A stretch of DNA of 64,000 nucleotides from Macrostomum lignano (taxonomy: Eukaryota), in contig NIVC01000237.1 of assembly GCA_002269645.1 (NCBI GenBank), forward strand, positions 310,001 through 374,000, given 5' to 3'. A program made the translations under genes and the position numbers. Shown piece by piece: positions 5,752-62,921 of the stretch; positions within the stretch are counted from its first letter, which is position 1, and each line of letters begins with the position of its first letter. The notes under the pieces are model-generated. The model was not told where the DNA came from, did not search any database, and saw only the letters and a list, made by a program, of their open reading frames with translations.

Positions 5752-15282
<9,531 letters not shown>

Positions 15283-20225: not shown

Positions 20226-20503
20226 TTACTGCAGGAACAATGGTGACTGTGACTGTAGATTTTTTAAATTAATAAATATATTGTTAAGTAGGTTGAATAA
20301 TAATAAATAATAAAATGCAATAAAAATTCTAACTGGCAATAACAAACGTTAATGCACAATTCTTTATCATTGTAGAAAGCAACAAACTTTAAAAATGCTT
20401 AGGATTTTCTTGAGAGCATAGGAGACAGCAATATTTACAGCATAGGAGAACGCGTCCCTCGAGGGGGGGGGCGGATGGCTAGTCTAATACACTAGAATCT
20501 TAA

Positions 20504-42620: not shown

Positions 42621-44062
42621 GCAGATGATTAGGCCTCTGTTGCTTCTTTACAGTCTTGAGCAGACATTTCTCAGCCACCGATGCTCAGCCTTTGGCTTCC
42701 TTTTCTTTGCAGGTGTAGAACTAATTTAGCTAATTTAATTAACGCAAAATAAGTTGCTGCGCAGTTTGCATTAGAAATTGTCCAGAATTTGGGCTCCCTG
42801 TGCAAAGATTTTCTCAGCCAGGAGAGAGGCTCATTGTTCACTTAATCTCCGCTGGTTCCTCGCCTGAGGAAGTCTGGCTGTTGCGGCTAGGAATGCGAGA
42901 GGCGAGAGCGATCTCTCAGCTCCTGGTCCTGATTATCTTCACTTTGCTGTTGAATTGTGTTCAAGGCCTGCTTTTTATCCTCTTCACTTCTCTGCAGAAA
43001 AAAACAGCTTGCTTGGCTTCCACAGTGATTGCCTAATGCAAGCTGCGTCCGACTGCCACCTTGCCCACCCCTGCCGCCCCGAGGCCACATGGGGTTCGTT
43101 CAGCTAGGGGGGCTGCCCGCGACCACCCAGTTAGTGAGGTCTTGGTTGGCTGGCTGGCTGATTGAACAGTAGGCGGCCTTCCCTGGGCCATCTCTCCTAT
43201 CGGTTCTGCCTCTCTCTCTCTCTCCGGCTCTCACTCACTCTGCGCCGTTCCGTGCAGTGAGTCACAGTCGGAGCCGCTCCGCTCACGCGCGCGTGGCCCC
43301 CTTCTCTTCCCGCCTTCCTTATCTCGGCCCCTACAAGACCTGCGTAAGTTAAGTCGTCCTTTGTCTGTGTTGTGTATCTCGTGAGCACGTTCATTAGCAG
43401 GCACAGACAGCTATGAGCGGTCTGGGCGCGTTATTGGAGGACCTTACAGACAGAAAAAGAAGGAAGTGAGGTCTAGGACTCCAGACTGTAGAACACCCCC
43501 AGCACCCAAGGACCCATGAACGAGAGAATGTAGAAAGCGATGAAGACCGGTTTTTTCAACTCTCCCCAGCTCCAGTCTTCTCTGCTCCAGTGAGTACAGT
43601 TGGAGAAAGGCGGGTTGGGTGGGGGCGGAGGGCGAGCAGAGCAGATGGAGTATTCGGAGTGTGGGTGTGGGTTGCGATATTGCGTAACCGAGCAGCTGCC
43701 AGACAGGCCTGGTCGCCACGGGCTGCGAGACCCACGAACCCTATGCCAACAGTACCTACCATATTTGCAAAGCATTCGAAACCCTGAACGAAAATGGATC
43801 GAGATGGCTTTCTATTCTCTGCCCCTTGACAGAAACTGTACAGCCAATATTGACTGCCGTGGAGAGGGAGAGGCAGAGAGGCTGTGTTGACAGTGACAGA
43901 TGAGGCTCGAGGATCGACGAGCGAAAAAATGAATTTCAGGCTGCGCTCGAGTGCAGACGTATAGAAATGGGCCTGAGGTCGACGCTGGTGACGAATGCGG
44001 ATTTCTGTGCAAACTGGTGCAAATTTGCTTTAGCAAGTTTGTCAGTAGCTGATTTCAGTCCG

Positions 44063-44170
44063 CCCAAAATGAGTGTCTGTCTGCTGCGCCAAAATGAGTG
44101 TTAGTGGCGCCAAAATGAGTGCCTGCGGCTCCAAAATGAGTGCCTGCGGCTTTAAAATGAGTGCTAACAA
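44063..44170. repeat. Short repeat of about 20 bp (CCAAAATGAGTGCCTGCGGCT-like), about 5 copies
   Basis: AAAATGAGTG recurs five times. Confidence 0.8.
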
Positions 44171-44904
44171 CACCGATTCCCCAAATAATGTAGGAATGTA
44201 GTCATGTAGAATTATCGGCGTTGTTCTCCCTCCCCCCTCGCCATAAAATCCACGACGACGTCCCTGACAGCAATGGATGCATATAGAAAGAAGACCGGTA
44301 TTAGCTGTGGTGTGAATTTATTGGGCATGAATTATGAAATCAGGAATGGTAACAAGATTTAATGCAGGATTTAGTGATGAGTCAGACTGAGAGAAGGCAT
44401 CACGAGAGGCAGAACAACTGGAGCAGAGATATGGCAGCCAAGCACTTGAACGAAGGGCCATTTCCTGCATGCAGCAAGATCCAGCGATGACAGAATTGCA
44501 TTATGTTAGCCAGCCTGGTGCTTCATTCAGTTCAATAATAGCTATAGGCTCCCTCTGACATTGCTTAGACTGACATGTCGTTGTCAAACACGCAAATGGG
44601 TTGCGTTTTTTTGTGCCTGGGCAGGCAGTTCTAGCAGGCGGTAGGTTGCGTAATTCTGAAGCAGTTAGTGGCTCTGCCAATTTTAAGTGAACTGGAAGAG
44701 GGACAGTGCAATTGTTCTGCATGACTACTTTGCAAACAATTGTGGATTAACCATGTGCAGTAGCTATGGTGTTACTTGGAGACTCACTCAGGCAGCTCCC
44801 ACTGGGATTGAAATGAGTTTACTGCTTAACGGCAATGGGCCAGGCATCCAGGGGAGGTTGAATGGGGGTCAGATGTCCTCCTAGTAAAAATGGGGGTCCA
44901 TGTT

Positions 44905-45370
44905 CTGAGGAGCTATGTTAGCGCTAAAATCTCCTCTGAGGAACTAGGCTGGCGCTAAAAATCTCCTCTGAGGAACTTGGTTAGCGCTAAAATCTCCTCT
45001 GAGGAACTAGGCTGGTGCTAAAATCTCCTCTGAGGAGCTATAGGTTGGCGCTATACAATCTCTCCTCTAGAGCTAAATTGGCGCTATACAATCTCTCCTC
45101 TAGAGCTAAATTGGCGCTAAAATCTCTCCTCTAGAGCTAAATTGGCGCTATACAATCTCTCCTCTAGAGCTAAATTGGCGCTATACAATCTCTCCTCTAG
45201 AGCTAAATTGGCGCTAAAATCTCTCCTCTAGAGCTAAATTGGCGCTAAAATCTCTCCTCTAGAGCTAAATTGGCGCTACAATCTCTCCTCTGGAGCTAAA
45301 TTGGCGCTACAATCTCTCCTCTAGAGCTAAATTGGCGCTACAATCTCTCCTCTAGAACTTAAATTAGCGC
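44905..45370. repeat. About 31-bp minisatellite (AATCTCTCCTCTAGAGCTAAATTGGCGCTAC)n
   Basis: Direct reading. Confidence 0.9.
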
Positions 45371-45994
45371 TGAAATTGTTCAGGCCAGTCGCACTATCGT
45401 CGCCCACAGGTAAAAAAACGTGCCCGCGATGCGACCCGCAATCAATGCGCATGCAAGTTGGCAGATACTGGCCTTGTATTTGGCCTGCTGCATGCCTGCA
45501 GTCGCAGTGGAGTGAGTCACGCCCCATGGGCTTATAATCCGCACTGTTACCTTCAGCGGCGATTAACATTATGCCTCCTAATACTGTTAAAAGAAACAGA
45601 CAAATTATACTTAGTCATCCTTGTAGCTGCAGTGTCGCCTCGGGGATTGAGGCACCGTCATTCCATACCATTGTCATGCGTGCATATGGCACAGGTGCCT
45701 CATATGCTTAATTAAATGTTTTAATAGAAAAAGCAACGCAAGAGAAAAATTGGTTCGCCTGACAACAAGGTTGGCCCGATAAAATGATAAATTAAGCATT
45801 AAGCAATGTTAAATATTTTATACTTTAGTTTACTTTTTTTACTGTCTGTATCTGCAGAAATAACAGTTGCAAATTTATCTGTCAATCAACATGAGTGAAA
45901 GTCTTCAAGTTTCCGTTTAAATTAGGGGTCAGAAAACTCTCTGTGCGACCCTTGGGCTCTTTAAAACTTCAATAGCAATCCGGTCTCTTCAGGG

Positions 45995-46400
45995 TCTGTC
46001 TTCTCGGTTCTCTTCTTTCCTTTCATTTCCTCTCCTCTCATCTTCTCTTCTCATCTCTTCACTTCTCTCATCTTCACTTTTCATCTCTTCCCTCCTGTCA
46101 TATTTTCTTCTCATCTCTTCCCTCCTCTCATCATCTCTTCTCATCTCTTTACTTCTCTCATCTTCACTTCTCATCTCTTCCCTCCTCTCATCTTCTCTTC
46201 TCATCTCTTCTCTCCTGTCATCTTCACTTCTCATCTCTTCCCTCCTGTCATCTTTTCTTCTCATCTCTTCCCTCCTCTCATCTTCTCTTCTCATCTCTTC
46301 TCTTCTCTCCTCTCATCTTCTCTTCTCATCTCTTCCCTCTTTTCATATCTCATCTCATCTCACATCTCTTCTTCTCTCCTCTCTTGTCTTATAGTCTCTT
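45995..46400. repeat. Polypyrimidine low-complexity repeat (CTCTCATCTTCT-based, period about 30 bp)
   Basis: Direct reading. Confidence 0.9.
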
Positions 46401-48918
46401 TCATTTCCTCTCTCATCCAATATCCTATCTCATCTCGTCTACACCTTCTCCTTTCCTCTCTCACCTGGCTAGATTATTTAATCTGGACCATGAGGTAAAT
46501 AAAGTGCAAACAAAGTGTAAACAAAAAACTTCTGGTTTAAAAATGGAAATTTCCCTTCACAGACTGGGAATCGCAGACCAGAACTGCTGGTATAAGTGAT
46601 ATTCTGCAAGGCCGTTGCACATTCCGACAACAAATTGGAGGTGCAGTTTGCCTTTTCTAATCTTGCCTCTGCGCAGAGACGCGTGTAAATATGAATGATT
46701 GCGTAATCAAAGCAAGTTGTTGCACCAAATATAAGGCTTTATTATACCTAGAGCTATATAGATATATTGTTATAAGTTTTGCTTGATCTCTGTGGGTGCT
46801 TCACGATCAACGTGGAACACAGAGACAGATAGATAAGCTGGATTTTATCGCTGGGCTGATCAAAACTCCAAGCACTGCACCGACACTACTAAAAAGCTGC
46901 CACTCGTGTCTGTTTAACTATAATTCGTGCTATCTTGAGCATTATCTTTTGATTCCATTATATTTACTGCCTATAAAATGATATATTATAGAATATAATT
47001 TTTAGTTTATAGGACATGCAGTTCATTACAATTTATGTACGTGTTCCAGTTCGATAATGTCATTCAACTGCCCCCCCCCCGCGCTGTTTGCCCTGTAACA
47101 TAGCTCATGAAGAGTGTACATGAAAATGTAACTGTGCACATAAATGTAACAATGAATATAATATACAGCATCCATGCAGGCGCACTCACGAGTGATCCGA
47201 TCGAAACACGCGTACGCTTCGACTCTCGGGGGGGGGATGATAAGTCTCAATCTCAGAATTACATGTAGATTAGGCATTTGATAGTTAGAGTTGATGATAG
47301 ATAGGCCTGCAGCCTCGTCCCTTGTAACTGGCCTAGCACTGTACAGCGATTACAAAGTCTCTCGATCGACTAGAATTCATGATCAAAGGACCGCGACCTT
47401 GGCTACGCGCTGTACATGTACGGTTCATTCATTTGTTGAAAATGTACATGATGAAGATTAAAATGTGGCGGTCGGCTCTGCCCTTATATTTTTTGAGACT
47501 AGTCTCCGTATATTGCGCTGTCCTGGTCCCTCCCCTGAGACCCCCGAGTTCCCAGCTCCTGGTGCCCTCGCTGAGAGGTCCGTCTATTCCCACTAAAGTC
47601 TAAGTTTCATTAATTCCACAGTAAGCCGCCCGTGTTACGCCTTTTCCATTTATCTATCTGCCTATTCAGCTTTGAAGTGAGTAAAGAGAGCCGTGGGCTA
47701 AAAATGGAGAAAGCAGTAATTTTAATTGTGCAAATTTCCGCTTCCGTGGAGGTTTTACGGTTTCTGTTTCTGCACCGAACGTCTCTCTATTGCAACTGAT
47801 CGAAAACCAAAGCAAGCTTTATGCAAGAAGGGTAATGCCAACTGTTCCGAGTTAGAAATTGCCAGCAATATTTTCAGCAATTCTGCAGTGGTAACTGGTA
47901 GCAGCGACTACTTATAGTAAAAACAATAGAATTTTGAGATTGAAATTCCTAAATTCAGCAATTGCGGCTCGAGAATATCAGATCCGTAGGAAAGATAACC
48001 GTAAATCTTCAACTCTTTCAGTGTTTCAGCATTAACTTAAACCGCTTAGCAACAGCCACAGCTATTTTCCACCGAGACTTGAGGAGCAAAGTAGATGGAG
48101 TCACCTTATTCATTACCAGTTTGTTTTAATCAACGTTTTAAAAAGATTTCAAAGTCATCGCGTCCGGCTGTAAAGCTGAATGAGTCCTGACCTGACCTAA
48201 TCTATTTATTGATTATTCTTCTTGAGCATCCGCAGGTAAAGTACTTTATAGGCCTAACTTAAGCTTATTGAATAATAAATCTAACTGTGTATCACGAGTA
48301 AAAATTTCCAAACAATCTAAGTTTTATTAGAGACAGAACAAAAATGAAAATGAAAAGGGTGAAATAGGCCTTTTTAAAAACCTTTTTAGGCGTAGGCCTA
48401 TTCTACCCTCTATGACATGGCATGAGGATGAGGGTGAGAATGAGAGGATGAGACGCTAGGCTAGGCCTATTCTTTCCTGGCTTAGCAATAAATGCTATCA
48501 TTGACATTGCTAGGACTAGGCCCTATTCAAGAAAAAAGTATAGGCCAACTGGCCAAGTTGCCATAGGGATTATTAATATTAGCATTATTAAGGGGGCAGC
48601 AAGGGGCTAAAAATTTCTACAGACAAAAAAACATTTGAATAAAAAATGATAATGATAGGCCTATACTATATTCATGCCAATTAATATCATGTAGTCTGTA
48701 GATAGACTATTTTTTAACTCTGATGGCCTAATAAGTTAGACATTTTTGGTTCAAAGATTTTTCTTAAAGTCGATGTCTTATCGACTTATGTCTATGACAA
48801 AAAAATGACTAGGCCTACCTAGGCCTTATCATTTTTGTATCTTTGCCTTTCCTTTGTCTTTTGGTCTGGTTTTTTGTGTCTAGAAAAGCTAGACTACCTG
48901 GATATTGAGATCATTTTT

Positions 48919-49487
48919 GGCAATAGTGCAGTTTTGAACGCGAAATTATTTTTCATTTAAATTTGAAAGTTCAAAACCAGAAAACAATAACAACAATAAA
49001 AATTGATGTTTTAAACCATTCTAATGATTGTGGCAGAATTTTTAGCTCCCTGGTTGCCAAACTTGCCAACTCATCATTGTGTTCTAGTGGTGGATACAGA
49101 GCTTGTCACTGGGCACTATAGTAGTGGCAAATCCAGAAAAGCATGTTTCCGAAAAGCCATGATACAATATGTTGTCCAAAAGAAAAAGCAGATATTAGCA
49201 GCTTCTTAGCTAAAGGGAAACAGTTCAAGCCCCCCCCCACTTGAGCCCTTTTTGATTTTTAAACTATTTTTTCTATAGACAACTTGCATTTCAAGTAGTA
49301 TTCAAGCGTGGCACAGATTTAATGAAAAAAGCATATTAATAGAGCGCCCATTTGCTTTAAAGTTCCGTGACCAGTGAGCTCTGGCACAGTTGCTAGAATG
49401 GTTTAAAACATTATTGTTATTGTTTTCTGGTTTCAAACTTTCAAATTTAAACAAAAAATATTTCGCGAACGAAACCACACTATTGCC
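48919..49487. mobile_element. Degenerate inverted-repeat (MITE/foldback-like) element
   Basis: 48919-49037 is an imperfect reverse complement of 49381-49487 (e.g. TTTAAATTTGAAAGTT..AAACCAGAAAACAATAACAA). Confidence 0.65.
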
Positions 49488-49849
49488 TATTTTTTAAATA
49501 TTAGTTTAGGGCATTCTTCTCAAATTGTTTGTTTAACTATTTTTTCAATGTTTTTCATATTTTCTCCACTTGAGAAGCTGATTTTAGCATGTTTAAACAT
49601 CCCTTAAGCTATTAAAACAGTAAAATTAACAACTTGTTTTTTAAGTACTTTTTTCTATCTTTAGCTATTCTTAATAATTCAACTTAACAATTTCAGGGCA
49701 TTCTCTTAGCAGTGTTAATAGACTTAATGGTTGGTTAACAGTCTTAGCAAAAACTAATTAGCAGCAAAAACATAAGTCTAAGTGCTCAGACTTCCTTTCC
49801 CCCTTTAACCAACTTATCCCTTTGGGCCATAGACCTATTGGGCCATTCC

Positions 49850-50609
49850 CAGTGGTGTGATTGAGGCGCGAATTTGCGCCAGGCGCAAAAAAGGCGCAAA
49901 TACGCGATTTCTGAGGGCAGGCGCGAATATTCGTCAAGCAGAGGCGCGATTTTTCAATTTCTGAATTTTCATTTTTTACTGATAAACTGATCACGTTTAG
50001 TCTATTCACGCACGCTTTATTCAAATTTAAACTTTATGTTATGGTGTACAATACATGCAAATCTGGATCTGGAGCAGCAGCTGAAAATGAAAGAAGACGA
50101 GATCGAGTCAAAACGGAAGCAGACTGAAGAGAGTTCCAACGACTGCTGCTGGAGCTGACTCGTAACAAGGAGAAGGATCAAGAGTTGGAACAGCTTCGAC
50201 AGGAGAAATGCAAGCTCCAGCAGAAGAAATTGAAGGAAGCTGAAAGAATTGCTGAGCAAGTGCTGAAATGGAAGGCTGTTGAGCAGGAAGTTAGGAATAG
50301 CCATTGCCTGCCCCAGAGTGTCCTTCAAAAAAGTTTAGAAATCAAATACCATGAAGTTTTGACACCCATTTTTGTCCAAGGACATTTGCTGCTCGCTTTT
50401 TAGTTGTGCAGGCCAAACTTTTATGAGTGGTAAAGTACTGCCACAGCAAGGATTGATCCTTAGTGCTGGAAAAAAGAAGCAAAAACCATAAAAATATGGG
50501 TTTTCTACATGTGCATATATGTAGTTAGCATGTTATTTAAACTAGTAAACAATGGCGCAAATTTTTTTGTGAGGCGCGAAAAAATGGCCCTTTGCCAATC
50601 ACACCACTG
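49850..50609. mobile_element. Non-autonomous hAT element, 760 bp
   Basis: Perfect 14-bp TIR CAGTGGTGTGATTG / CAATCACACCACTG. 8-bp TSD GCCATTCC (49842-49, 50610-17). Subterminal GGCGC(G/A) motifs. Confidence 0.92.
50057..50403 (+). pseudogene. Frameshifted coiled-coil coding fragment inside the hAT element
   Basis: ANLDLEQQLKMKEDEIESKRKQTEE, then a frameshift at about 50130, then FQRLLLELTRNKEKDQELEQLRQEKCKLQQKKLKEAERIAEQVLKWKAVEQEVRNSH. Codon-like sequence in an AT-rich context. Confidence 0.6.
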
Positions 50610-51462
50610 GCCATTCCTAATAAGCATCAGTGTCGTGTTAGACAACATGTGCTAGATTTTTATCCTTCAAAAATTTGTCATTTCTGCTTTGCAATTCAGC
50701 CTTGTACTTTTCAGTTAGCTGACTCCCTTTGTCTACTATGCTCTTTCCTATAGACGATCCCAGCCATTAATTTACCATATATATTTCAGTTAACTTGTTC
50801 ACTAATGACTGACTATATATGTTAGTATAAATACAAGTTTAAATCGCAGCCTAGGCCCTTTATTTATTTTTGCCCTATTCTAGTCAAGACCGAAAAAGTG
50901 CTTAAAAAACAAAGTTGTTAATTTACTGTTTTAATAGATTGGATGATGTCTAAACATGCTAAAATCAGCTTCTAAAGTGGAGAAAATGTGAAAAACATTG
51001 AAAAAATAGTTGAACAAACAATTTAAGAAGAATGCATAATTTAGCTTTAGCTATTAGCTAGGGAATATAATCCCAGGATCCCAAGATCCCAAAATCCTAG
51101 AATTAGGCCCAAAATTCCAAGATTTTGATTGTGCCTAAATCCCAGGATTCTAAATCACAGGATCACACTTGTCCGAGATTCAAAAATCCCTAGATTGACC
51201 ATCAGGATCCTAATCCTAGTTTGCAATAATTCAACCATTCATTCTTAGGTAGTATAGTATTTATAGATGAGCTACTATCAGGTGAAAATTGTAACCTAGT
51301 TGGCCTGCTTTGATTTAATAATCTTTTAAACACATAGGCTAGTGAGAAGGGGATATAAAACTAAAGCTATTGGTATATCAAAGGAGATTTTAAATGGTAT
51401 TCACCGACTAATATAATTATTATTATTCTAAAACCTGTTCACAGAGCCTAAAGCAATAGAAG

Positions 51463-51644
51463 CAGGGGCGGAACAAGGGGGGGGGGCCAAGGGGGCCATG
51501 GCCCCCCTTAGCTCTGCCAAAAAAATCCTCAGATATATTGGTATCATGCTGTATTGGTATCATGGTACTCTAATTGCAGCTCTGGCCTGACTAGACATGA
51601 GGCTTGCCCCCCCCCCCCTTGATAAAATCCTGGGTCTGCCCCTG
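51463..51644. mobile_element. hAT MITE, 182 bp
   Basis: TIR CAGGGGCGGA / TCTGCCCCTG (9/10). 8-bp TSD AATAGAAG (51455-62, 51645-52). Confidence 0.88.
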
Positions 51645-53018
51645 AATAGAAGCCAATTTCTCATTGTTTCTGATCATATGTAGCACTATATCTTGCTAGA
51701 CAAGAGTCAAATAATTGTTTATTTGAAATCTCCTTCTATTTCAAACCTAGCTAAAATCAGGGAGTCTCAACTTTACATAGATCAAAAGCCTCCCTATGCA
51801 AAAGACCTCATTCTCAGCACTGTCAAGACACCTTTTAGATGCTTAGCATAGGAGCAATGGTAGAACTACATGTACTTTAAGCAGTCCCTACCTTCAAAAC
51901 TCTCTGGCCATAGTTGGGATTAGAATAGTGGGACCTTGCTATCAGGCCACAACCCAAGCTACCAATTCTCCATCTAGGGCAGGTGCCCTTGGGCCTTGGA
52001 AGGTAAGGCTAGGTTTTTTTCAAGGTTGGAAATACAGTTGCTAGCTGGCCCTTAGGGCTCAAAATCTAGTTGCCAAAGGCTATTTTTGGTTGTCCATTGG
52101 CAACTAGCCAAATTCTCGAGGATAGATATTTTCAACAACACTATGTTTAAAAAGCAGAAATTTGTTCTCTCAACTCTAAGATTGCTATCTATGCTGCAAA
52201 CAATTACAAACTAACAATTACATTGTATTGATTTATATAGCACTTTTATTACATTTACAAAATCATTTTTTGAAATTGGCAACTGGCATGGAGAAAATGA
52301 AGTTGCCAAATTGGCCTTTGATACCAAAAATCCAGTTGCTAATAAGATTTTCAAGGGGCCAAAAAACCCAGGGGTGAGATCTGATCCCCTTCTACCATGG
52401 TATCAGTACCTTAGGCCATAGCTCCAAGCTATCATTCCCCAGGTTATATCGTAATCAAATGTGATTTTCCTAAGCTGATACTAGCATGTAAAAAAGCCTG
52501 TCTATTATGTTAGTCTGTACAAGTATATCATACTCCAATTTAGAGCTCACTGTTAGTTTCTCATTAGCAAAATATTTTGTTTTGTTCTATCTTATTATTG
52601 AAGGCCCTTTAAAATCAGAATAGATGGCTTTGTAAACCAAAATTGCACCAACAAAAATTAGAAACTTTTTTAATCCTGGGATCCCGGGATCCCAGTCCAA
52701 TTTGTTGGGATTCTGGGATTGGCAAAGTTTGGGATATTCCAATCCTGAGAATCCTGGGATTTTTTAAGTCCTTATCTTTCGGCTTTACATATATGTTTTT
52801 GTTTAGAATGTTGGTCTGTTAATACAACACTAATTTCATGGAATATTTATTAGTAGATTGATATGCTTTTACTTGAAGTATAGAATTAAAAATAATTTTA
52901 GTTGTATTTGTAATTCTTTTATTAATAATACAATGCCACTTTAACAATATAAAACAACTATCAATACTTAAGACACTCCTAATAGTAGTAGTATGTTTTT
53001 ACACCACTAATTCTCCAG

Positions 53019-54926
53019 CCTTCAATCAGCAAGGATAAGCCACAGCAGCGTGGCTCTTCAAAGCTGCAGCAGAAGCAGAAATTGGCAAAGCCAAAGCAAC
53101 AGCAGCCAACCAAGGTGGTTCTCCGCCGCCTGCCTGCCGGCCTGTCTGAGGCCGACTTCCTCGCCCAGGTTGGCAGCTTGCCGTTCCAGCACAGCGAATT
53201 TCGCTACTGCCCTGCCGACCCGGAGCTCGGCTTCTGCCGGGCATACGTCTGCTTGAGCAACAAGGAGGACCTGCTGCCCTTCTGCCAGCAGTGGGACGGC
53301 TACGTCTTCGTGGATGCCAAGGGGGTCGAATCGGCCGCTCTAGTCGAGCTGGCGCCCTACCAGGTAAGGCCTGGCCGCTGCAGCCAAGTGCCTCTTTTTC
53401 CTCTCTACTCCCCTTCCATCTCTGCCGCTCTCACCTGTCCTTTAATAATAATAATGCCTAATAGGCAACCAACAGCTCAGCCGCAGCTATTGCGCGGCGC
53501 ATCTGAAGGCTGCATACGGCTGTTCAGTCCAAGGACTGGGGGCCGGGGGGTCGCCACACACATCCTCAATTACCCCAGCTAATGCTGGCACCCATTTTAC
53601 AGCTGGGTGGACTGAAGCAATGCAGAGTTAAGTGTCTTGCTCAAGTACACAAATTGTTCCAAGTGGGTCGAGAATCGAACCCCCGACCTTCCGACGCTCT
53701 AACCACTTAGACCACAACCCTTATGCTATGCCTAGACTTTCCCTAGCTCAGTAGGCTAGTAAGAGTGCACTTGGAGTTTAATAGGGCATCCAGAGCGTCT
53801 CAGAAGTGACACACTAACGATTCTACAGTGACGCTGAAGCGCTTCTTCTGCGACTTTCTAGCGCTCAAATGCGCCTGAAATACGATTTTACGGCCCCAGA
53901 GTTGTTTCACAGTCGCAAACAATAAAACGCTTCAAAAATGATTTTCGAGGAGTCTGAAATGACTCTGGGATGCTTCTTGGCCTGGGCACCGTTCTCATCG
54001 GCTTTTGTTCAATACCTTTCCAGGTGACAGATGGCGCCAAGAAGGCCAAGCCGAATCCGAAGCAGGGCACTCTGGAGGCCACACCCGAGTACGCCGCCTT
54101 CCTGGCCGACCTGGCTGCCGAGGCGGACCGACCGGCGCCGACCTGGGAGTCCAGCCTCGAAGCCATTCGCCGGCGCGAGAAAGAATCCGCCGAGGCTGCC
54201 GACGCGTCCAAGCTGACGCCGCTGCTGCTGCACCTGCGGCAGAAGCGGCTGGACCGGCAGCGCCAGCAGCGTGACAAGGCCGAGGCGCGGCGTCGAGACG
54301 ATGAGGACAGGCGGAAACGCGACCGGGAGCGTGAGAAGCAGCGAAAGCAGCAGAAAGGCAAACCGAAGCAGCAGGCTCAGCAGAAGCAAGCTTCGACAGG
54401 CGCCAAACCTGAAACTGCTCAAGCTGCCCAGCCTCCATCAGCATCATCCTCATCAACTAAAGTAATAGAAATAAAACGTAGGCCTGCAACTGCCATCGAC
54501 GAGAGAAACTCTGTGGATGAGAAGCCTCTGCCACCTCAGCCTCCGCCACCTCCGCCGCAGCAGCAGCAGCAGCAACAGCAACAACAGAAACCGGCGCAAC
54601 CAAAGCAGAAGCAACAGAAGCAGCAAGCAAGTGCAGACAGTCGCGGCGGAGGCGGAGGTCGCGGAGCCGCCGGCGGAGGACGCGGTGGCGGCGGCGGCAG
54701 GCGGAAAACCGACTTCGATTATAAGCAAGAGTACTACAAGTACTTGCAGGGCATTGGGGGCTACGAAGAATACAGCCAGGACGGCTCTTCCGCTTCTTAT
54801 TCTCGTCGAGGCGGTCGCGGAGGCGGGGGCGGCAGCCAGGGCCAGAGCGGTCAGCAGCAGCCACAACAGCCAAAGAAGTCCTACAGCGCGCAGCGCAGCG
54901 CAAGAGGCGGCGGCGACCGCAGCTGA
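53019..54926 (+). CDS. UPF3: Nonsense-mediated decay factor UPF3 (Smg-4); initiator Met not encoded in the first visible exon
   Basis: Exons 53019-53363 and 54024-54926 (phase 0). RRM-like UPF3 domain TKVVLRRLP...RAYV...WDGYVFVDAKG...ALVELAPYQ and GTLEATPEYAAFL match recalled UPF3B (SKVVIRRLP...FDGYVFLDNKG...VEFAPFQ...GTIDDDPEYRKFL). The ORF-track start at 53082 is TTG. Confidence 0.92.
53443..53720 (-). mobile_element. tRNA-derived SINE with CORE-like central domain, in the UPF3 intron
   Basis: Minus strand: A-box GGTCTAAGTGGTTAGAGC, B-box GGTTCGATTC, GTGTACTTGAGCAAGACACTTAAC...CAGCTGTAAAATGGG (similar to the MIR/CORE consensus), and an (ATT)n tail. Confidence 0.8.
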
Positions 54927-55129
54927 CATTGTGGGTGGAGTTGGTGGGCCGATTGTGTTATACCTGGTCATTGGATAGAATATATCGAAAGTTAATACGA
55001 GCCGTATTTGTGATTATTTTCTATAATTCAATTAGATTTTGTTATCAGTAGATTGGTGCAAATTCTTTTTTCACATATGTGATCCCTATTGCCTCTGTAA
55101 CAGTAGTGTGAGTGCGTTCTCTCTAGCTC

Positions 55130-55725
55130 CCTCAGTCCCTCCCTCTCCCACTCTCCCTCTACCTCTTCTCCCTCACCCTCTACCTCTCCTCCCTCACCCT
55201 CTCCCTCTACCTCTCCTCCCTCACTCTCTCCCTCTACCTCTCCTCCGTCACTCTCTCCCTCTACCTCTTCTCCCTCACTCTCTCCCTCTACCTCTTCTCC
55301 CTCACTCTCTCCCTCTACCTCTTCTCCCTCACTCTCTCCCTCTACCTCTTCTCCCTCACTCTCTCCCTCTACCTCTTCTCCCTCACTCTCTCCCTCTACC
55401 TCTCCTCCCTCACCCTCTCCCTCTACCTCTTCTCCCTCACCCTCTCCCTCTACCTCTTCTCCCTCACTCTCTCCCTCTACCTCTCCTCCGTCACTCTCTT
55501 CCTCTACCTCTTCTCCCTCACTCTCTCCCTCTACCTCTTCTCCCTCACTCTCTCCCTCTACCTCTCCTCCGTCACTCTCTCCCTCTACCTCTCCTCCCTC
55601 ACCCTCTCGCTCTACCTCTCCTCCCTTACCCTCTCCCTCTACCTCTCCTCCCTTACCCTCACCCTCTACCTCTCCTCCCTTACTCTCTCGCTCTGTCCCT
55701 CCTTCACTCCTCCCTCTCCCTCAAA
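55130..55725. repeat. 27-bp polypyrimidine minisatellite (CTCCCTCTACCTCTTCTCCCTCACTCT)n
   Basis: Direct reading. Confidence 0.93.
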
Positions 55726-56104
55726 TAGAAGATTGCATCAGTATTTCCCCCTCTTGCTACAGTGGCTGGGTGTAGTGGAGGTCGAAGGTGAAGCTTCAGG
55801 TTGAAACGAATTTAAAAATCATCTCTTCGATATCCGTTCATGCAGCCGTCTGTAAACATATTGAAATTTTATTGCACGTGTAACACCATTTTATGCAGCT
55901 TCTGACAAAACTATTTCTACTGGTCTTTGTCTGTTTCGTCTTTGAGCCTGTGCTAAACCAGGAACTGATGTGTGTTTCACATAATTACTTTAATATAATA
56001 CATCCGTCATACTGGTAAATAATTCTCATCAGTTTCAGTGTAACCAAATCGGACTTTGAGTGGCGGTTTTTTGTTCTCTATTATCTTGCTTCACTCTCAG
56101 TACA

Positions 56105-58971
56105 TCAGTGCCTCTATTAGTGCCTCTCAATGTTTTCAGTTTGAGTCTTTCTTAGTGCCTCTCTCAATGCTCTCAGTGTCTTTCAATGCTCTCAGTGCCT
56201 CTCAATGCTCTCAGTGCCTCTCAATGCTTTTAGTGTCTCTCTCAATGCTTTCAGTGCCTCTCTCAATGCTCTCAGTGTCTCTCTCAATGCTTTCAGTGCC
56301 TCTCTCAATGCTTTTAGTGCCTCTCTCAATGCTTTCAGTGTCTCTCTCAATGCTTTCAGTGCCTCTCTCAATGCTTTCAGTGTCTCTCAATGCTCTCAGT
56401 GCCTCTCTCAATGCTTTCAGTGCCTCTCTCAATGCTCTCAGTGTCTCTCAATGCTCTCAGTGCCTCTCTCAATGCTTTCAGTGCCTCTCTCAATGCTTTT
56501 AGTGCCTCTCTCAATGCTTTCAGTGTCTCTCTCAATGCTCTCAGTGTCTCTCTCAATGCTTTCAGTGCCTCTCTCAATGCTCTCAGTGCCTCTCTCAATG
56601 CTCTCAGTGCCTCTCAATGCTCTCAGTGCCTCTTAATGCTCTCAGTGTCTCTCAATGCTTTAAGTTTCTCTCTCAATGCTCTCAGTGCCTCTCTCAATGC
56701 TCTCAGTGTCTCTCTCAATGCTTTCAGTGTCTCTCTCAATGCTCTCAGTGTCTCTCTCAATGCTTTCAGTGCCTCTCTCAATGCTCTCAGTGCCTCTCTC
56801 AATGCTCTCAGTGCCTCTCAATGCTCTCAGTGCCTCTCAATGCTCTCAGTGTCTCTCTCAATGCTTTCAGTTTCTCTCTCAATGCTCTCAGTGCCTCTCT
56901 CAATGCTCTCAGTGCCTCTCTCAATGCTCTCAGTGTCTCTCTCAATGCTTTCAGTGTCTCTCTCAATGCTCTCAGTGTCTCTCTCAATGCTTTCAGTGCC
57001 TCTCTCAATGCTCTCAGTGCCTCTCTCAATGCTCTCAGTGCCTCTCAATGCTCTCAGTGCCTCTCAATGCTCTCAGTGTCTCTCTCAATGCTTTCAGTTT
57101 CTCTCTCAATGCTCTCAGTGCCTCTCTCAATGCTTTCAGCGCCTCTCTCAATGCTCTCAGCGCCTCTCTCAATGCTTTTAGTGCCTCTCTCAATGCTTTC
57201 AGTGTCTCTCTCAATGCTCTCAGTGCCTCTCTCAATGCTTTTAGTGCCTCTCTCAATGCTTTCAGTGTCTCTCTCAATGCTCTCAGTGCCTCTCTCAATG
57301 CTTTTAGTGCCTCTCTCAATGCTTTCAGTGCCTCTCTCAATGCTTTCAGCGCCTCTCTCAATGCTCTCAGTGCCTCTCTCAATGCTTTCAGTGCCTCTCT
57401 CAATGCTCTCAGTGTCTCTCAATGCTCTCAGTGCCTCTCTCAATGCTCTCAGTGTCTCTCTCAATGCTCTCAGTGTCTCTCTCAATGCTTTCAGTGCTTC
57501 TCTCAATGCTCTCAGTGCCTCTCTCAATGCTCTCAGTGCCTCTCAATGCTCTCAGTGCCTCTCAATGCTCTCAGTGTCTCTCTCAATGCTTTCAGTTTCT
57601 CTCTCAATGCTCTCAGTGCCTCTCTCAATGCTTTCAGCGCCTCTCTCAATGCTCTCAGCGCCTCTCTCAATGCTTTTAGTGCCTCTCTCAATGCTTTCAG
57701 TGTCTCTCTCAATGCTCTCCGTGTCTCTCTCAATGCTCTCAGTGCCTCTCTCAATGCTCTCAGTGCCTCTCAATGCTCTCAGTGCCTCTCAATGCTCTCA
57801 GTGTCTCTCAATGCTTTCAGTTTCTCTCTCAATGCTCTCAGTTTCTCTCAGTGTATCCCAGTGCCTCTCTCAATGCTCTCAGTGCCTCTCTCAATGCTCT
57901 CAGTGCCTCTCAATGCTCTCAGTGCCTCTCAATGCTCTCAGTGTCTCTCTCAATGCTTTCAGTTTCTCTCTCAATGCTCTCAGTGCCTCTCAATGCTCTC
58001 AGTGTCTCTCTCAATGCTTTCAGTGTCTCTCTCAATGCTCTCAGTGTCTCTCTCAATGCTTTCAGTGCCTCTCTCAATGCTCTCAGTGCCTCTCTCAATG
58101 CTCTCAGTGCCTCTCAATGCTCTCAGTGCCTCTCAATGCTCTCAGTGTCTCTCTCAATGCTTTCAGTTTCTCTCTCAATGCTCTCAGTGCCTCTCTCAAT
58201 GCTTTCAGCGCCTCTCTCAATGCTCTCAGCGCCTCTCTCAATGCTTTTAGTGCCTCTCTCAATGCTTTCAGTGTCTCTCTCAATGCTCTCAGTGCCTCTC
58301 TCAATGCTCTCAGTGTCTCTCTCAATGCTCTCAGTGTCTCTCAATGCTCTCAGTGTCTCTCTCAATGCTCTCAGTGTCTCTCTCAATGCTTTCAGTGCTT
58401 CTCTCAATGCTCTCAGTGCCTCTCTCAATGCTCTCAGTGCCTCTCAATGCTCTCAGTGCCTCTCAATGCTCTCAGTGTCTCTCTCAATGCTTTCAGTGCT
58501 TCTCTCAATGCTCTCAGTGCCTCTCTCAATGCTTTCAGCGCCTCTCTCAATGCTCTCAGCGCCTCTCTCAATGCTTTTAGTGCCTCTCTCAATGCTTTCA
58601 GTGTCTCTCTCAATGCTCTCAGTGTCTCTCTCAATGCTCTCAGTGCCTCTCTCAATGCTTTCAGTGCCTCTCTCAATGCTCTCAGCGCCTCTCTCAATGC
58701 TTTTAGTGCCTCTCTCAATGCTTTCAGTGTCTCTCTCAATGCTCTCAGTGTCTCTCTCAATGCTCTCAGTGCCTCTCTCAATGCTCTCAGTGCCTCTCAA
58801 TGCTCTCAGTGCCTCTCAATGCTCTCAGTGTCTCTCTCAATGCTTTCAGTTTCTCTCTCAATGCTCTCAGTTTCTCTCAGTGTATCCCAGTGCCTCTCTC
58901 AATGCTCTCAGTGCCTCTCTCAATGCTCTCAGTTTCTCTCAGTGTATCCCAGTGCCTCTCAGCCTTTTGGA
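56105..58971. repeat. 19/21-bp satellite (CTCTCAATGCTCTCAGTGCCT)n, about 140 units
   Basis: Direct reading. It is the source of the many LSMLSVP / ALRE / TESIER ORFs. Confidence 0.96.
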
Positions 58972-59155
58972 GTGCCCTGCCCTCACTCGAGTCACTCCGC
59001 CTGTGTGGAACCCTAGCCTCGCAATCGTGAAGACTTCGCACCAGAATACGCGCAGCTTCTGAGCACGACATAATCTCAGAGCGAAACTCTATCGCACTTA
59101 AATTCATTAAAGTTAAGTTAACTAGACCCATGCTTAATTAATTGTGACAATTACC

Positions 59156-59245: not shown

Positions 59246-62139
59246 ATGATGAATAATAAATTTATACCAAAAAATTTTCAGCCCTATATCAAAGCAGCAC
59301 GTGGGTATTCCCAGCTTAAAAACTAATTATTGATTTTTTCCCACTGGGTGCAGCTCTGCTTTTGTCTGTCTGGCTGTCTCTCTGATCCTGCCCCGTCCGT
59401 GTCTGCCAGTCCACGCAGCTGCATGTATTGCTCAGCTGCAGTTCCCGTAATGCCTCCCCTGTGGTCTGCTTTTCCTGTTCATCTTCCTCTCAGCTGGGGC
59501 TCCGACTAGCGCCAAAGCCTTCGTATTGTAGTGCATGCATGTAGGTCTTGAGTTCGATTCCGTTCTACGGCAGCCATATTAATAGATTGTAGCTTCGCTT
59601 TTTGTGGTCCTGAGCTCGATAGTGACGTTAATAACTTGGGTCTGCTGGTCCTGAGTTCGAATCCGTGTGCGGTGGCTATACTAATAACCTTGGGTTTGGA
59701 TGTCCTGAGTTCGAATCCGTGTGCGGTGGCTATACTAATAACCTTGGGTTTGGATGTCCTGAGTTCGAATCCGTGTGCGGTGGCTATACTAATAACCTTG
59801 GGTTTGGATGTCCTGAGTTCGAATCCGTGTGCGGTGGCTATACTAATAACCTTGGGTTTGGATGTCCTGAGTTCGAATCCGTGTGCGGTGGCTATACTAA
59901 CAACTTTGGGTTTGGATGTCCTGAGTTCGAATCCGTGTGCTGTGGCTATGCTAACAACTTAGGGTTTGGATGTCCTGAGTTCGAATCCGTGTGCGGTGGC
60001 TATACTAATAACCTTGGGTTTGGATGTCCTGAGTTCGAATCCGTGTGCGGTGGCTATACTAACAACTTTGGGTTTGGATGTCCTGAGTTCGAATCCGTGT
60101 GCGGTGGCTATACTAACAACTTTGGGTTTGGATGTCCTGAGTTCGAATCCGTGTGCGGTGGCTATGCTAACAACTTTGGGTTTGGATGTCCTTAGTTCGA
60201 ATCCGTGTGCGGTGGCTATACTAACAACTTTGGGTTTGGATGTCCTTAGTTCGAATCCGTGTGCGGGGGCTATACTAACAACTTTGGGTTTGGATGTCCT
60301 GAGTTCGAATCCGTGTGCGGTGGCTATGCTAACAACTTTGGGTTTGGATGTCCTGAGTTCGAATCCGTGTGCGGTGGCTATACTAACAACTTAGGGTTTG
60401 GATGTCCTGAGTTCGAATCCGTGTGCTGTGGCTATGCTAACAACTTTGGGTTTGGATGTCCTGAGTTCTATTCTGTATTTGGCTTCCTTATTAATAATTT
60501 TGGGTTTGGTGGTTGTTGCCGTTGGTTCGATTCCGCACGCGCGGTGGCTATATTAACTACTTACACAGGGTTTGGTGGTCTTGAGTTCGATTCCGTGCTC
60601 ATCTGGGGTCTGTGGAATGAGCTCCTATCTCCCATATCTCTTCTATCCTGCCTCGTCTCAGCCAACCCTCCCATCGCCCACGTCTGTTTCAAACTGCAGA
60701 TTTAACTCAGCCTCACTAAATGGCCAATCATGCATGCATGCCAACTCTTGTGTAACTCCCGCCTAAGTTTAATTAATCCACCGAAAACTTTTTGAGCAGC
60801 AGCTCATTAGCGTCAGAACAGAACGAAAAATTGATTGAGCAGTGTATAAATACAGAAGTCTGGCTGATTGGCCTTAAGACCCACCCCCTCCCCGATCGGC
60901 AATAAAACTTTATTAACAGAAGAAATTAATTACTTTTCTGCCCCTCCTTCATTGGCAATGTCCGCGCTGCCAACTGCTCTTCCACAGGTAGCCATAGCTC
61001 GGCTGAGTTAAACTGCCTGAGAAAATCTGCAGTCATGGTTTAGAGGGCTCTGGCTGCATGGCTTTATTGGCTGTCCAATCATCTGTCCCAACAGTGTTGT
61101 CATGGCAACCGCCCGCATATACGCGAATACGAAGTAAGCCTGGCTTGAACAGGCAAGCTCTGCTGATTCCCATTATTAATCCCTGAGCCCCTTCTAACCC
61201 CAGTCCCTGTTAACGGCTTCAGGCAGTGCTGAGTTTGGTTTTATGGGGTTCTACACTGAAAGATCTGGTGTGAAAAACTACTGCTTCCAAATTCCATCAC
61301 TGCTATGAAGTATGGCTGACTGTGCCTCTCTGTGCCTCTCAGTGCCTCTCCTAGTGCCTCTTAGTGCTGCCTGTCCTAGTGCCACTCTCAGTGCCTTTCT
61401 CGGTGCCTCGCCCAGTGTCTCCCACGCCTCTCCTAGTGCCTCTTAGTGCTTCTCCCAGTGCCTCTCCTAGTGTCTCCTCTCTCAGTGTCTTTCAGTGCCT
61501 CTCCCAGTGCTTCTCCTAGTGCCACTCTCAGTGCCTCTCAGTGTCTCTCAGTGCCTCTCCTAGTGCCTTTTAGTGCTGCCTGTCCTAGTGCCACTCTCAG
61601 TATCTTTCTCGGTGCCTCTCCTAGTGCCTTTTAGTGCTGCCTGTCCTAGTGCCACTCTCAGTATCTTTCTCGGTGCCTCTCCTAGTGCCTTTTAGTGCTG
61701 CCTGTCCTAGTGCCAATCTCAGTATCTTTCTCGGTGCCTCTCCTAGTGCCTCGTCTCCCAGTGTCTCTCCTGAAGAGAGAAAAGAGAAACGACTGCTGAA
61801 AATTGTGTGCCAACTGTAAAATGATTTATTTGACTTTGTGTGAGAAACGCAGGGTTTGGCTTGAGGTTTTGGTCACTCCGGATTCCATGTCACTAAATCT
61901 CCTTGATCCAGGGAGAGGAGCTGGGGAGGCTGCAGGTGGGGCGCTCACCCACCCTGCCCGTGGGTTAGGTCACACAGGCCCCAGCACTCTATAAAGCTTT
62001 AAACTGCTGGCTTGGGAGCTGCTCAACAAGTGCAAGACATCGGCTTGTCAGAGAAGCCAGGAAGCTTAAAATTTAGTCCATGATTCAATGAGCAGCATCG
62101 AGATGACTTCTAATGGAGAGACCGCCATGCGACCCGAAG
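59246..62139 (+). CDS. Possible 5' exons of an unidentified gene running out of the window
   Basis: Candidate exons 59246-59300 (MMNNKFIPKNFQPYIKAA, donor GTGGGT, phase 1), 61912-61935 (24 nt) and 62077-62139 (63 nt, SMSSIEMTSNGETAMRPE), all phase-compatible GT-AG. No homology recognised. Confidence 0.22.
59540..60600. repeat. 54-bp minisatellite, each unit containing GAGTTCGAATCC (Pol III B-box-like)
   Basis: About 15 regular units at 59648-60470, plus degenerate copies on both sides. Confidence 0.93.
61096..61109. promoter_or_regulatory. X-box-like motif (GTTGTCATGGCAAC) among CCAAT motifs
   Basis: Near-consensus RFX palindrome. ATTGG/CCAAT at about 60865, 61066 and 61076. Confidence 0.4.
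61320..61770. repeat. Degenerate CAGTGCCTCT/CTAGTGCC repeat related to the 21-bp satellite
   Basis: Shared CAGTGCCTCTC core. Internal triplication of about 58 bp at 61560-61740. Confidence 0.8.
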
Positions 62140-62211
62140 GTAAAATATCTTCAATACTTGGCCACCTGTCAATAATCTACCGGTATATACTAATTTTGCG
62201 TTGTTTAGCTT

Positions 62212-62921
<710 letters not shown>

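What the first reader, a model, noticed from the sequence alone, without database searches (positions are those of the whole stretch)
52985..53363. UPF3 has no ATG of its own: start codon possibly donated by a spliced leader
Seen: the frame is closed upstream by TAG (52989-91). A branch-like CACTAAT and TTCTCCAG acceptor (AG at 53017-18) precede CCT TCA ATC... exactly in phase 0. No in-frame ATG occurs before or within the conserved RRM; the nearby ATG at 52993 is out of frame. Known: flatworm SL exons end in AUG, which can act as the initiator Met. Inference: trans-splicing gives M-P-S-I-S-K-D-K..., making a core NMD factor dependent on trans-splicing and potentially coupling the two pathways. 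The one upstream donor I examined (about 48236) has an in-frame TGA and no ATG.
Basis: partly seen in the sequence, partly recalled or inferred. Interest (0 to 1): 0.72.

Follow-up and report, generated by a model that had tools for sequence, protein, structure and literature searches.

The report
ATG-less UPF3 gene, likely leader-initiated
The UPF3 (mRNA quality-control) gene of the flatworm Macrostomum lignano has no ATG in its reading frame and most likely borrows its start codon from the trans-spliced leader, a mechanism known in flatworms since 2006; no RNA evidence could be reached to prove it.

Summary
The window is Macrostomum lignano Mlig_3_7 (NIVC01000237.1). UPF3 has two coding exons (53019-53363 and 54024-54926; 415 codons; complete Smg4_UPF3 domain, E 2e-38). 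Neither exon contains an in-frame ATG. The frame is closed by TAG at 52989. The ATG at 52993 is out of frame and opens a 5-codon ORF. Composition and codon usage switch from non-coding to coding at a CTCCAG acceptor (AG 53017-18). That acceptor fits the published M. lignano trans-splice motif [T/C]TNCAG.

The M. lignano leader ends in ATG. A modelled leader-plus-exons mRNA has that ATG as its first AUG, and it opens a 416-aa ORF. The resulting N-terminal length is typical of UPF3 homologues.

This is the best explanation (about 0.7), but it is not shown. I reached no RNA data, no paralogous DNA and no GenBank gene model. "Exactly in phase 0" is not special, because 16 of the 18 nearby AGs are in phase. 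The proposed branch point is too close to the AG. The NMD/trans-splicing "coupling" has no support.

Leader-donated AUGs are documented and common in flatworms, so this is a probable new member of a known kind, of modest interest. Rivals are a cis-spliced ATG mini-exon, a homopolymer assembly error, and non-AUG initiation.

The parts
52989..52991 (+). In-frame TAG that closes the UPF3 reading frame 30 nt upstream of the exon
52993..53010 (+). Out-of-frame ATG with a 5-codon ORF (ATG TTT TTA CAC CAC TAA). It contains the T5 run at 52995-52999; one extra T there would bring the ATG into frame.
   Evidence: The nine in-frame codons 52992-53018, which cover this stretch, look non-coding (GC3 0.22, LLR -0.66 per codon).
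53000..53018 (+). Pyrimidine-rich tract (72% C/T over -20..-3) ending in CTCCAG; proposed spliced-leader trans-splice acceptor (AG at 53017-18)
   Evidence: one search shows it is the best acceptor of all AGs between 52900 and 53113. The motif [T/C]TNCAG is from PMC8629364. An independent UniProt gene model built on a different assembly uses the same junction, E|PSISK.
53019..53363 (+). UPF3 coding exon 1: 115 codons, no in-frame ATG. It holds a K/Q-rich tail of 31 residues followed by the first half of the Smg4_UPF3 domain.
   Evidence: Pfam PF03467 E 5e-24. 445 homologues at E<=1e-3. Codon LLR +0.26 for the tail and +0.78 for the domain part; the other two frames are negative.
53364..54023 (+). 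Intron of 660 nt, phase 0, GTAAGG...CCTTTCCAG
   Evidence: The joined exons match Pfam profile positions 2-171 of 172 without a break.
54024..54926 (+). UPF3 coding exon 2: 300 codons plus TGA, no in-frame ATG. It holds the second half of the UPF3 domain and a low-complexity R/G/Q-rich tail.
50134..50289 (+). Pseudo-exon (FQRLLLELTRNKEK...WKAVEQE) that the UniProt model A0A1I8IJ13 splices onto 53019. It has no ATG, a weak GTTAGG donor and no pyrimidine tract at its own acceptor. I judge it a prediction artefact, not part of UPF3.
   Evidence: donor 2.6 bits against 11.4 for the real donor; no Pfam family

Best explanation
This is the Macrostomum lignano UPF3 gene. Its genomic coding sequence starts directly at a trans-splice acceptor (AG 53017-18) and contains no ATG in frame.

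Proposed mechanism:
1. The primary transcript starts somewhere in the AT-rich sequence upstream. That outron carries seven short-ORF ATGs in its last 400 nt.
2. The outron is removed when the 35-nt spliced leader (...TTGCATG) is joined to 53019.
3. The 3'-terminal AUG of the leader becomes the first AUG of the mRNA, with G at -3.
4. That AUG initiates M-P-S-I-S-K-D-K..., giving a 416-residue UPF3.

Shown here: the absence of any in-frame ATG, the stop upstream, the acceptor motif, the coding boundary, the frame compatibility, the normal N-terminal length and the AUG-terminated leader of this species. Inferred: that this acceptor is actually trans-spliced and that translation starts at the leader AUG.
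For: - Species and leader. The window is identical to M. lignano NIVC01000237.1. The leader is CGGTCTCTTACTGCGAAGACTCAATTTATTGCATG, 30% of genes are trans-spliced, and the acceptor motif is [T/C]TNCAG (PMC8629364). The terminal ATG of the leader is conserved in the genus and is described as a translation start (PMC10468722).
- No ATG in 415 codons.
- TAG lies 30 nt upstream of the exon.
- GC jumps from 0.225 to 0.57 at 53000.
- Codon log-likelihood is -0.66 per codon for the 9 codons before the AG, +0.26 for the tail and +0.78 for the domain after it.
- 53019 has the best pyrimidine tract and motif of all nearby AGs. Nearly every alternative AG is also in phase, so the model does not depend on the exact site.
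- In the modelled leader+exon mRNA the first AUG opens the 416-aa ORF. All the other AUGs tested (the next four) open out-of-frame ORFs of 153 aa or less.
- The Pfam domain is complete, profile positions 2-171 of 172, starting at residue 30.
- Homologues have a median of 34.5 residues before the domain (interquartile range 26-43), against 31+1 here. No N-terminal exon is needed.
- No gene is annotated in the 10 kb upstream, 42621-52620. Candidate ATG mini-exons occur at chance level: 12 in phase 0 against 10 and 9 in the control phases.
- An independent gene model on the older ML2 assembly uses the same junction. It could find a start only by fusing junk upstream.
- The mechanism has precedent. 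More than 40 S. mansoni cDNAs require the leader AUG (Cheng 2006, as cited in PMC9851317). In E. granulosus, 143 of 187 leader-bearing clusters are full length from the leader ATG (PMC3510090).
- Two other genes in this window have the motif 0 and 3 nt before their ATG.
Against: - There is no RNA evidence. No leader-containing read, cDNA or transcript-derived protein for this gene could be retrieved (searches found nothing; the supplements searched have no UPF3 entry, and one search found none held).
- I could not see whether or how GenBank annotates this gene, so the empty 10 kb upstream is only weak evidence.
- The 400 nt directly upstream (52621-53018) were not covered by that annotation check.
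- The acceptor motif is frequent (4.6 per kb per strand), and being in phase is expected from the codon composition.
- The four parasitic flatworm UPF3 genes have their own ATG.
- Mlig_3_7 is a PacBio-based assembly. One extra T in the T5 run at 52995-99 would put ATG 52993 in frame.
Confidence: 0.7

Rival explanations
1. A small cis-spliced 5' exon upstream supplies an in-frame ATG and is joined to the same acceptor at 53019. UPF3 would then have an ordinary genome-encoded start.
For: The acceptor at 53018 could serve cis-splicing as well as trans-splicing. Flatworm acceptor sites are extensively shared between the two (PMC12582326). Twelve phase-0 GT donors of at least 4 bits with an ATG-open upstream frame exist between 42700 and 52985, for example 48422-48433 MRMR|GTGAGA (8.4 bits) and 51267-51281 MSYYQ|GTGAAA (7.1 bits). 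A weaker candidate lies close by: 52863-52877 MLLLE|GTATAG (1.0 bit). A UniProt model does splice an upstream exon onto 53019.
Against: The candidates are no more frequent in the compatible phase than in the two control phases (12 against 10 and 9). They are 4-7 codons long and most have non-coding codon usage. The UniProt upstream exon has no ATG, a 2.6-bit donor and no pyrimidine tract, and the rest of that model is antisense to the neighbouring Ig gene. No gene is annotated in 42621-52620. Homologues do not require more N-terminal sequence.
Confidence: 0.13
2. There is an assembly error or polymorphism. The T5 run at 52995-52999 is really T6 (or T3), so ATG 52993 is in frame and the protein starts M-F-F-T-P-L-I-L-Q-P-S-I-S with no splicing at 53018.
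For: One extra T gives an open frame from ATG 52993 into the exon (sequence). The assembly is based on long reads (PMC5730564, PMC8629364), and such reads are prone to homopolymer indels (my own knowledge).
Against: The nine codons concerned look non-coding: GC3 is 0.22 against 0.61-0.86 in the exon, and the LLR is -0.66 per codon. They coincide with a pyrimidine tract plus the trans-splice motif. The gene model on the independent ML2 assembly also did not use this ATG; it spliced at 53019.
Confidence: 0.05
3. Translation starts at a near-cognate codon inside exon 1. The candidates are TTG 53082 (A at -3, G at +4) and CTG 53064. Trans-splicing would not be needed for the start.
For: Both codons are in frame and lie upstream of the domain. 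TTG 53082 has a good Kozak context. Parasitic flatworm UPF3 proteins have only 5-6 residues before the domain, so a short N-terminus is tolerated.
Against: Non-AUG initiation of a main ORF is rare (my own knowledge). The 21 codons upstream of the TTG show in-frame coding signal, while the other two frames are negative. Several HMMER alignments to homologues already start at residues 4-13 of the tail. Any un-trans-spliced 5' leader would carry seven upstream AUGs in its last 400 nt.
Confidence: 0.05
4. This copy is a non-functional duplicate in a partly polyploid genome that has lost its start, while another copy with its own ATG supplies UPF3.
For: M. lignano is a hidden polyploid, and 79% of BUSCO genes are duplicated in its annotation (PMC10468722).
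Against: The 415-codon frame is intact across two exons with canonical splice sites and a complete domain (E 2e-38). The copy in the ML2 assembly is 100% identical over exon 1 and likewise lacks a usable ATG.
Confidence: 0.03

Closest known systems
Flatworm mRNAs that use the 3'-terminal AUG of the spliced leader as initiator methionine (Cheng, Cohen, Ndegwa & Davis 2006, J Biol Chem 281:733; summarised in PMC9851317, PMC3510090 and PMC12582326)
   Same: The leader ends in AUG. The acceptor lies at the very start of the coding sequence. The leader AUG is in frame, and there is no genome-encoded AUG that could give the conserved N-terminus.
   Different: Those cases rest on cDNAs and translation assays in Schistosoma and Echinococcus. 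Here the trans-splicing of this particular gene is inferred from genomic sequence only. The species is the free-living Macrostomum lignano, for which I found no published list of genes that depend on the leader AUG. This gene also lacks ATG over its whole length, not only at the 5' end.
UPF3 / SMG-4 (Pfam PF03467) of other animals, including the parasitic flatworms Paragonimus westermani, Dicrocoelium dendriticum, Heterobilharzia americana and Taenia solium
   Same: The RRM-like UPF3 domain is complete (36-57% identity over exon 1). A basic N-terminal tail of ordinary length precedes it and a low-complexity tail follows it.
   Different: The parasitic flatworm genes have a genome-encoded ATG 5-6 codons before the domain. 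Three of the four have an acceptor-like pyrimidine tract plus AG only 6, 1 or 3 nt upstream of that ATG. This hints at trans-splicing next to the start, with the gene's own ATG lost only in the Macrostomum lineage; that is inference.
slORFs (open reading frames created by leader addition; slORFfinder, PMC9851317)
   Same: The ORF exists only on the trans-spliced mRNA.
   Different: slORFs in nematodes and other taxa mostly use near-cognate NUG codons in the leader and are often novel ORFs. Here a canonical AUG would start a conserved housekeeping protein.

Membership tests
Smg4/UPF3 family (PF03467) | Significant full-length match to the UPF3 RRM-like domain profile | tested here: met
   E 2e-38, 132.6 bits against a cut-off of 24; profile positions 2-171 of 172 at residues 30-191 of the joined exons. 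445 homologues at E<=1e-3, the nearest named ones being 'regulator of nonsense transcripts 3'.
Smg4/UPF3 family (PF03467) | C-terminal EJC-binding motif and UPF2 binding, i.e. function in NMD | not tested
   The C-terminal tail is low-complexity R/G/Q-rich. I did not test for an EJC-binding motif.
Leader-AUG-initiated flatworm mRNAs (Cheng et al. 2006) | The species' spliced leader ends in AUG | tested here: met
   From the literature, not from the window. The M. lignano leader is ...TTGCATG followed by a GTAAG donor (PMC8629364), and it is conserved in the genus (PMC10468722). No leader RNA gene lies in the window.
Leader-AUG-initiated flatworm mRNAs (Cheng et al. 2006) | The mRNA is trans-spliced at an acceptor at the 5' end of the coding sequence | not testable with these tools
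   Only indirect evidence is available: the CTCCAG motif, the pyrimidine tract, the coding boundary, and the same junction in an independent gene model. No RNA reads or cDNAs could be reached.
Leader-AUG-initiated flatworm mRNAs (Cheng et al. 2006) | The leader AUG is in frame with the main ORF | tested here: met
   The modelled leader+exon mRNA gives a 416-aa ORF from the leader AUG. Sixteen of the 18 nearby AGs would also be in frame.
Leader-AUG-initiated flatworm mRNAs (Cheng et al. 2006) | No genome-encoded in-frame AUG can give the conserved N-terminus, so the leader AUG is required | tested here: met
   There is no in-frame ATG in the 415 codons and a stop lies 30 nt upstream. The N-terminal length matches homologues. 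Caveat: a cis mini-exon is not excluded.
Leader-AUG-initiated flatworm mRNAs (Cheng et al. 2006) | Translation actually initiates at the leader AUG | not testable with these tools
   This needs ribosome profiling, N-terminal proteomics or a reporter assay.
Downstream gene of a flatworm operon (polycistron resolved by trans-splicing) | A same-strand upstream gene within about 1 kb after subtracting repeats (criterion of PMC8629364) | tested here: not met
   The nearest gene upstream is the Ig/fn3 gene on the opposite strand, with its ATG at 42620. Nothing is annotated in 42621-52620, and I saw no convincing coding ORF there. UPF3 looks monocistronic, with its own outron.

The most novel reading that the evidence does not exclude
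UPF3 production in M. lignano depends strictly on leader trans-splicing, and this dependence is used as regulation. When trans-splicing capacity falls, UPF3 and hence NMD activity would fall with it, changing the fate of un-trans-spliced or outron-containing RNAs. Selection would have removed every ATG from the gene so that no alternative start exists.
Probability: 0.04. Interest if true: 0.6.

Novelty: new member of a known kind. Interest (0 to 1): 0.28.

Why it matters
If confirmed, it gives a clean, conserved-gene example of obligatory leader-AUG initiation in M. lignano, the one flatworm with stable transgenesis. The mechanism could then be tested in vivo with reporters.

It also explains a practical annotation problem. 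Genome-only gene finders cannot find a start for such genes. They either drop them or fuse them to upstream junk, as happened in UniProt A0A1I8IJ13.

It does not by itself reveal a new link between NMD and trans-splicing. Leader-donated start codons are common in flatworms, and about a third of M. lignano genes are trans-spliced.

Tried and rejected
- **Rfam and ARAGORN on the whole window.** No leader RNA gene, no tRNA and no other RNA family. A search for the 3' part of the leader with up to 3 mismatches gave no match.
- **Word-indexed protein searches.** Three searches did not return any M. lignano UPF3 or any Ig paralogue. No transcript-derived protein and no paralogous locus could therefore be fetched.
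- **Exact look-ups of four candidate products.** I tried the protein with and without the leader Met, one residue shorter, and extended back to the upstream stop. None is in the collection.
- **Look-ups of neighbouring ORFs to see the GenBank model at UPF3.** Searches found nothing on record. P0002 is not on record as a gene.
- **Supplement searches for UPF3.** Three M. lignano papers and one S. mansoni paper had no UPF3 entry, and a fourth M. lignano paper (PMC8629364) had no supplements held as text. The one 'nonsense' hit is NMD3, a different protein.
- **Cheng et al. 2006.** The paper is not held, so I cite it through papers that summarise it.
- **Bacterial promoter/terminator scan.** Not applicable to a eukaryote, so I disregarded it.
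- **UniProt upstream exon at 50134-50289.** Rejected as a real UPF3 exon: no ATG, a 2.6-bit donor, no pyrimidine tract, no Pfam family, and the rest of the model is antisense to another gene.
- **Operon reading.** Rejected: there is no same-strand gene upstream.
Full report
**Origin of the window**

A 987-aa single-exon Ig/fn3 ORF on the minus strand (39657-42620) is found exactly once in the public collection. It lies on NIVC01000237.1 of GCA_002269645.1, the Mlig_3_7 assembly of the flatworm Macrostomum lignano. A 22,964-base stretch of that record is identical to window 29657-52620. Window coordinate plus 310,000 gives the record coordinate.

**The observation**

- TAG at 52989-91 is in frame.
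- ATG at 52993 is out of frame and opens only ATG TTT TTA CAC CAC TAA.
- TTCTCCAG ends at 53018.
- The exon 53019-53363 is exactly 115 codons and ends at a strong donor, CAG|GTAAGG (11.4 bits on a generic donor matrix).
- Exon 1 matches Pfam Smg4_UPF3 (E 5e-24).

The next exon begins after CCTTTCCAG at 54024 and runs to TGA at 54924-26. The joined exons match the UPF3 profile from position 2 to 171 of 172 (E 2e-38). This confirms the intron and shows that the domain is complete.

The observation can be strengthened. The whole 415-codon CDS contains no in-frame ATG, so the protein has no methionine at all.

- GC content jumps from 0.225 (52800-52999) to 0.57-0.64.
- I trained a codon log-likelihood on five other coding ORFs of the window against the intergenic sequence. 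It is -0.66 per codon for the nine open codons upstream of the AG. It is +0.26 for the 31-codon K/Q-rich tail, where the other two frames are negative. It is +0.78 for the domain part.
- Among all AG dinucleotides from 52900 to 53113, the one at 53017-18 has the best pyrimidine tract (72%). It is one of only two that fit the published M. lignano trans-splice acceptor motif [T/C]TNCAG (motif from PMC8629364).
- UniProt A0A1I8IJ13 is an independent gene model built on the older ML2 assembly, and it uses exactly this junction (...AVEQE|PSISKDK...).

First, "exactly in phase 0" carries little weight. The tail is encoded mostly by AAG and CAG codons, so 16 of the 18 AGs that could start an exon between 52992 and 53106 are in phase 0. 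The useful consequence is that the leader-AUG model does not depend on the exact acceptor.

Second, the proposed branch point CACTAAT has its A only 8 nt from the AG. That is unusually close (my own knowledge), so it should not count as evidence.

The motif alone is also frequent, at 4.6 per kb per strand.

**Does the organism have the required leader?**

Yes. The M. lignano spliced leader is CGGTCTCTTACTGCGAAGACTCAATTTATTGCATG, followed by a GTAAG donor. Thirty percent of genes carry it (PMC8629364), or 38.8% in the first annotation (PMC5730564). The terminal ATG is conserved in M. cliftonense and M. hystrix and is described there as a translation start codon (PMC10468722).

I modelled the mature mRNA as leader + exon 1 + exon 2. 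Its first AUG is the leader's (context GCAUGC, G at -3), and it opens a 416-aa ORF starting MPSISKDK. Every other AUG I tested (the next four) opens an out-of-frame ORF of 153 aa or less. By contrast, the last 400 nt upstream of the acceptor carry seven ATGs, each with an ORF of 9 codons or fewer.

**Is an N-terminal piece missing?**

No. Across 96 homologues from an exhaustive HMMER search, the number of residues before the domain has a median of 34.5 (interquartile range 26-43). The M. lignano exon gives 31, or 32 with a leader Met. Several alignments already begin at residues 4-13 of the tail.

**The cis-exon rival**

The region between the divergently oriented Ig gene (ATG at 42620) and UPF3 is about 10.4 kb of AT-rich, repeat-rich sequence without convincing ORFs. 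The record's annotation lists no gene at all in 42621-52620.

I enumerated every GT donor in 42700-52985 that could join 53019 in phase and has an open upstream frame with an ATG. There are 12 with a score of at least 4 bits. The two incompatible phases, used as controls, give 10 and 9, so this is chance level. The candidates are 3-32 codons long and most look non-coding.

The upstream exon used by the UniProt model (50134-50289) has several defects:
- it has no ATG;
- its donor is GTTAGG, at 2.6 bits;
- its own acceptor has no pyrimidine tract;
- it has no Pfam family;
- it sits next to a frameshifted coiled-coil-like ORF.

The 1,000 residues before it in that model are antisense translations of the Ig gene. 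I read that model as what a gene finder produces when a gene has no start codon of its own.

Even so, a short cis-spliced ATG exon cannot be excluded from sequence alone. I could not see whether GenBank annotates UPF3 here, which limits the weight of the empty upstream region.

**Other rivals**

- One extra T in the T5 run at 52995-99 would put ATG 52993 in frame. However, those codons look non-coding and overlap the pyrimidine tract, and the ML2-based model did not use that ATG.
- TTG 53082 and CTG 53064 are in frame, and TTG 53082 has a good context. Near-cognate initiation of a main ORF is rare, though, and the tail upstream of these codons shows coding signal.
- A dead duplicate is unlikely, given the intact frame and complete domain.

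**Comparison within flatworms**

The nearest flatworm UPF3 proteins come from Paragonimus westermani, Dicrocoelium dendriticum, Echinostoma caproni, Heterobilharzia americana and Taenia solium. All begin with M plus 5-6 residues before the domain. I examined the genomic sequence of four of them (all but Echinostoma), and there the ATG is genome-encoded.

Three of those four have a pyrimidine tract plus AG very close to the ATG:
- 6 nt upstream in Paragonimus (TTTTTTCACAG|AACGCA ATG; a leader AUG would be in frame);
- 3 nt upstream in Dicrocoelium;
- 1 nt upstream in Taenia.

This hints that UPF3 is trans-spliced right next to its start in flatworms generally, and that the Macrostomum lineage lost its own ATG once the leader AUG could replace it. 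That is inference, without RNA support.

Two other genes in this window show similar arrangements. The MED7-like gene has CTGCAG directly abutting its ATG, and the ORF starting at 20225 has CTGCAG|TAA ATG.

**Comparison with what is known**

Leader-donated initiator methionines are an established feature of flatworms.
- According to the summary in PMC9851317, Cheng et al. 2006 found the leader AUG in frame in 28% of S. mansoni trans-spliced transcripts, and more than 40 cDNAs required it.
- In E. granulosus, 143 of 187 leader-bearing clusters were full length from the leader ATG. Use of the leader AUG was conserved among orthologues (PMC3510090).
- All reported parasitic flatworm leaders end in ATG (PMC12582326).

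I found no paper that links UPF3 to this mechanism and no list of genes that depend on the leader AUG for M. lignano.

The finding is therefore a probable new member of a known kind. The suggested coupling of NMD with trans-splicing is speculation. With a third of the genes trans-spliced and leader-AUG use common, nothing singles out UPF3.

**Verdict**

| Question | Verdict |
|---|---|
| Observation | Confirmed, and extended: no ATG in the whole CDS |
| Leader-AUG interpretation | Best-supported explanation, about 0.7, but unproven for lack of RNA data |
| Coupling of NMD and trans-splicing | Unsupported |
| Interest | Modest |

Noticed in passing
window 22843-22935, minus strand (MED7-like gene, ATG at 22845): The trans-splice-type motif CTGCAG directly abuts the start codon (...CCGCAGCTGCAG|ATG TCC GAC). 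A leader joined there would give two in-frame AUGs in tandem (AUG|AUG). This looks like a possible intermediate state towards loss of the gene's own ATG.
   Followed up: partly
window 20223-20260, minus strand (138-aa ORF, ATG at 20225): The motif CTGCAG lies 3 nt before the ATG with TAA between them (CTGCAG|TAA ATG). A leader AUG would be stopped at once and the gene's own ATG used.
   Followed up: partly
UniProt A0A1I8IJ13 (P0002); corresponds to window ~40600-54926, plus strand: The public 1444-aa 'Smg4_UPF3 domain-containing protein' of M. lignano is a chimeric prediction. It joins antisense translation of the Ig/fn3 gene, a pseudo-exon at 50134-50289, and UPF3 with frameshifted stretches.
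   Followed up: yes
window 50040-50400, plus strand: A coiled-coil-like ORF (...LEQQLKMKEDEIESKRKQTEE / FQRLLLELTRNKEKDQELEQLRQEKCKLQQKK...) is interrupted by a frameshift. GC is slightly raised (0.43-0.46) and there is no Pfam match. It could be a decayed gene fragment or a repeat.
   Followed up: partly
window 53019-54926, plus strand: The UPF3 protein has no methionine anywhere in its 415 residues. This is unusual for a protein of that length, although the sequence is Q/A/G/K/R-rich and of low complexity.
   Followed up: partly
window ~53655-53700 (UPF3 intron): The string GGGTCGAGAATCGAACCCCCGACC is the reverse complement of a tRNA T-arm-like sequence (GGTTCGATTC). ARAGORN finds no tRNA, so it is probably a tRNA-derived SINE on the minus strand.
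   Followed up: no
window 55100-59000, 59640-60500, 62150-63000, 8100-8650, 4500-5390: Long tandem-repeat arrays give very long spurious ORFs in several frames (for example [32 protein letters not shown]). This fits the high repeat content reported for this genome.
   Followed up: no
L003 2985-3003 (Paragonimus), L004 2986-3003 (Taenia), L006 1480-1503 (Dicrocoelium), L005 1480-1503 (Heterobilharzia): Parasitic flatworm UPF3 genes keep a genome-encoded ATG. In three of the four a pyrimidine tract plus AG lies 6, 1 or 3 nt upstream of it. This suggests trans-splicing immediately before the start codon. Heterobilharzia shows no such site.
   Followed up: partly
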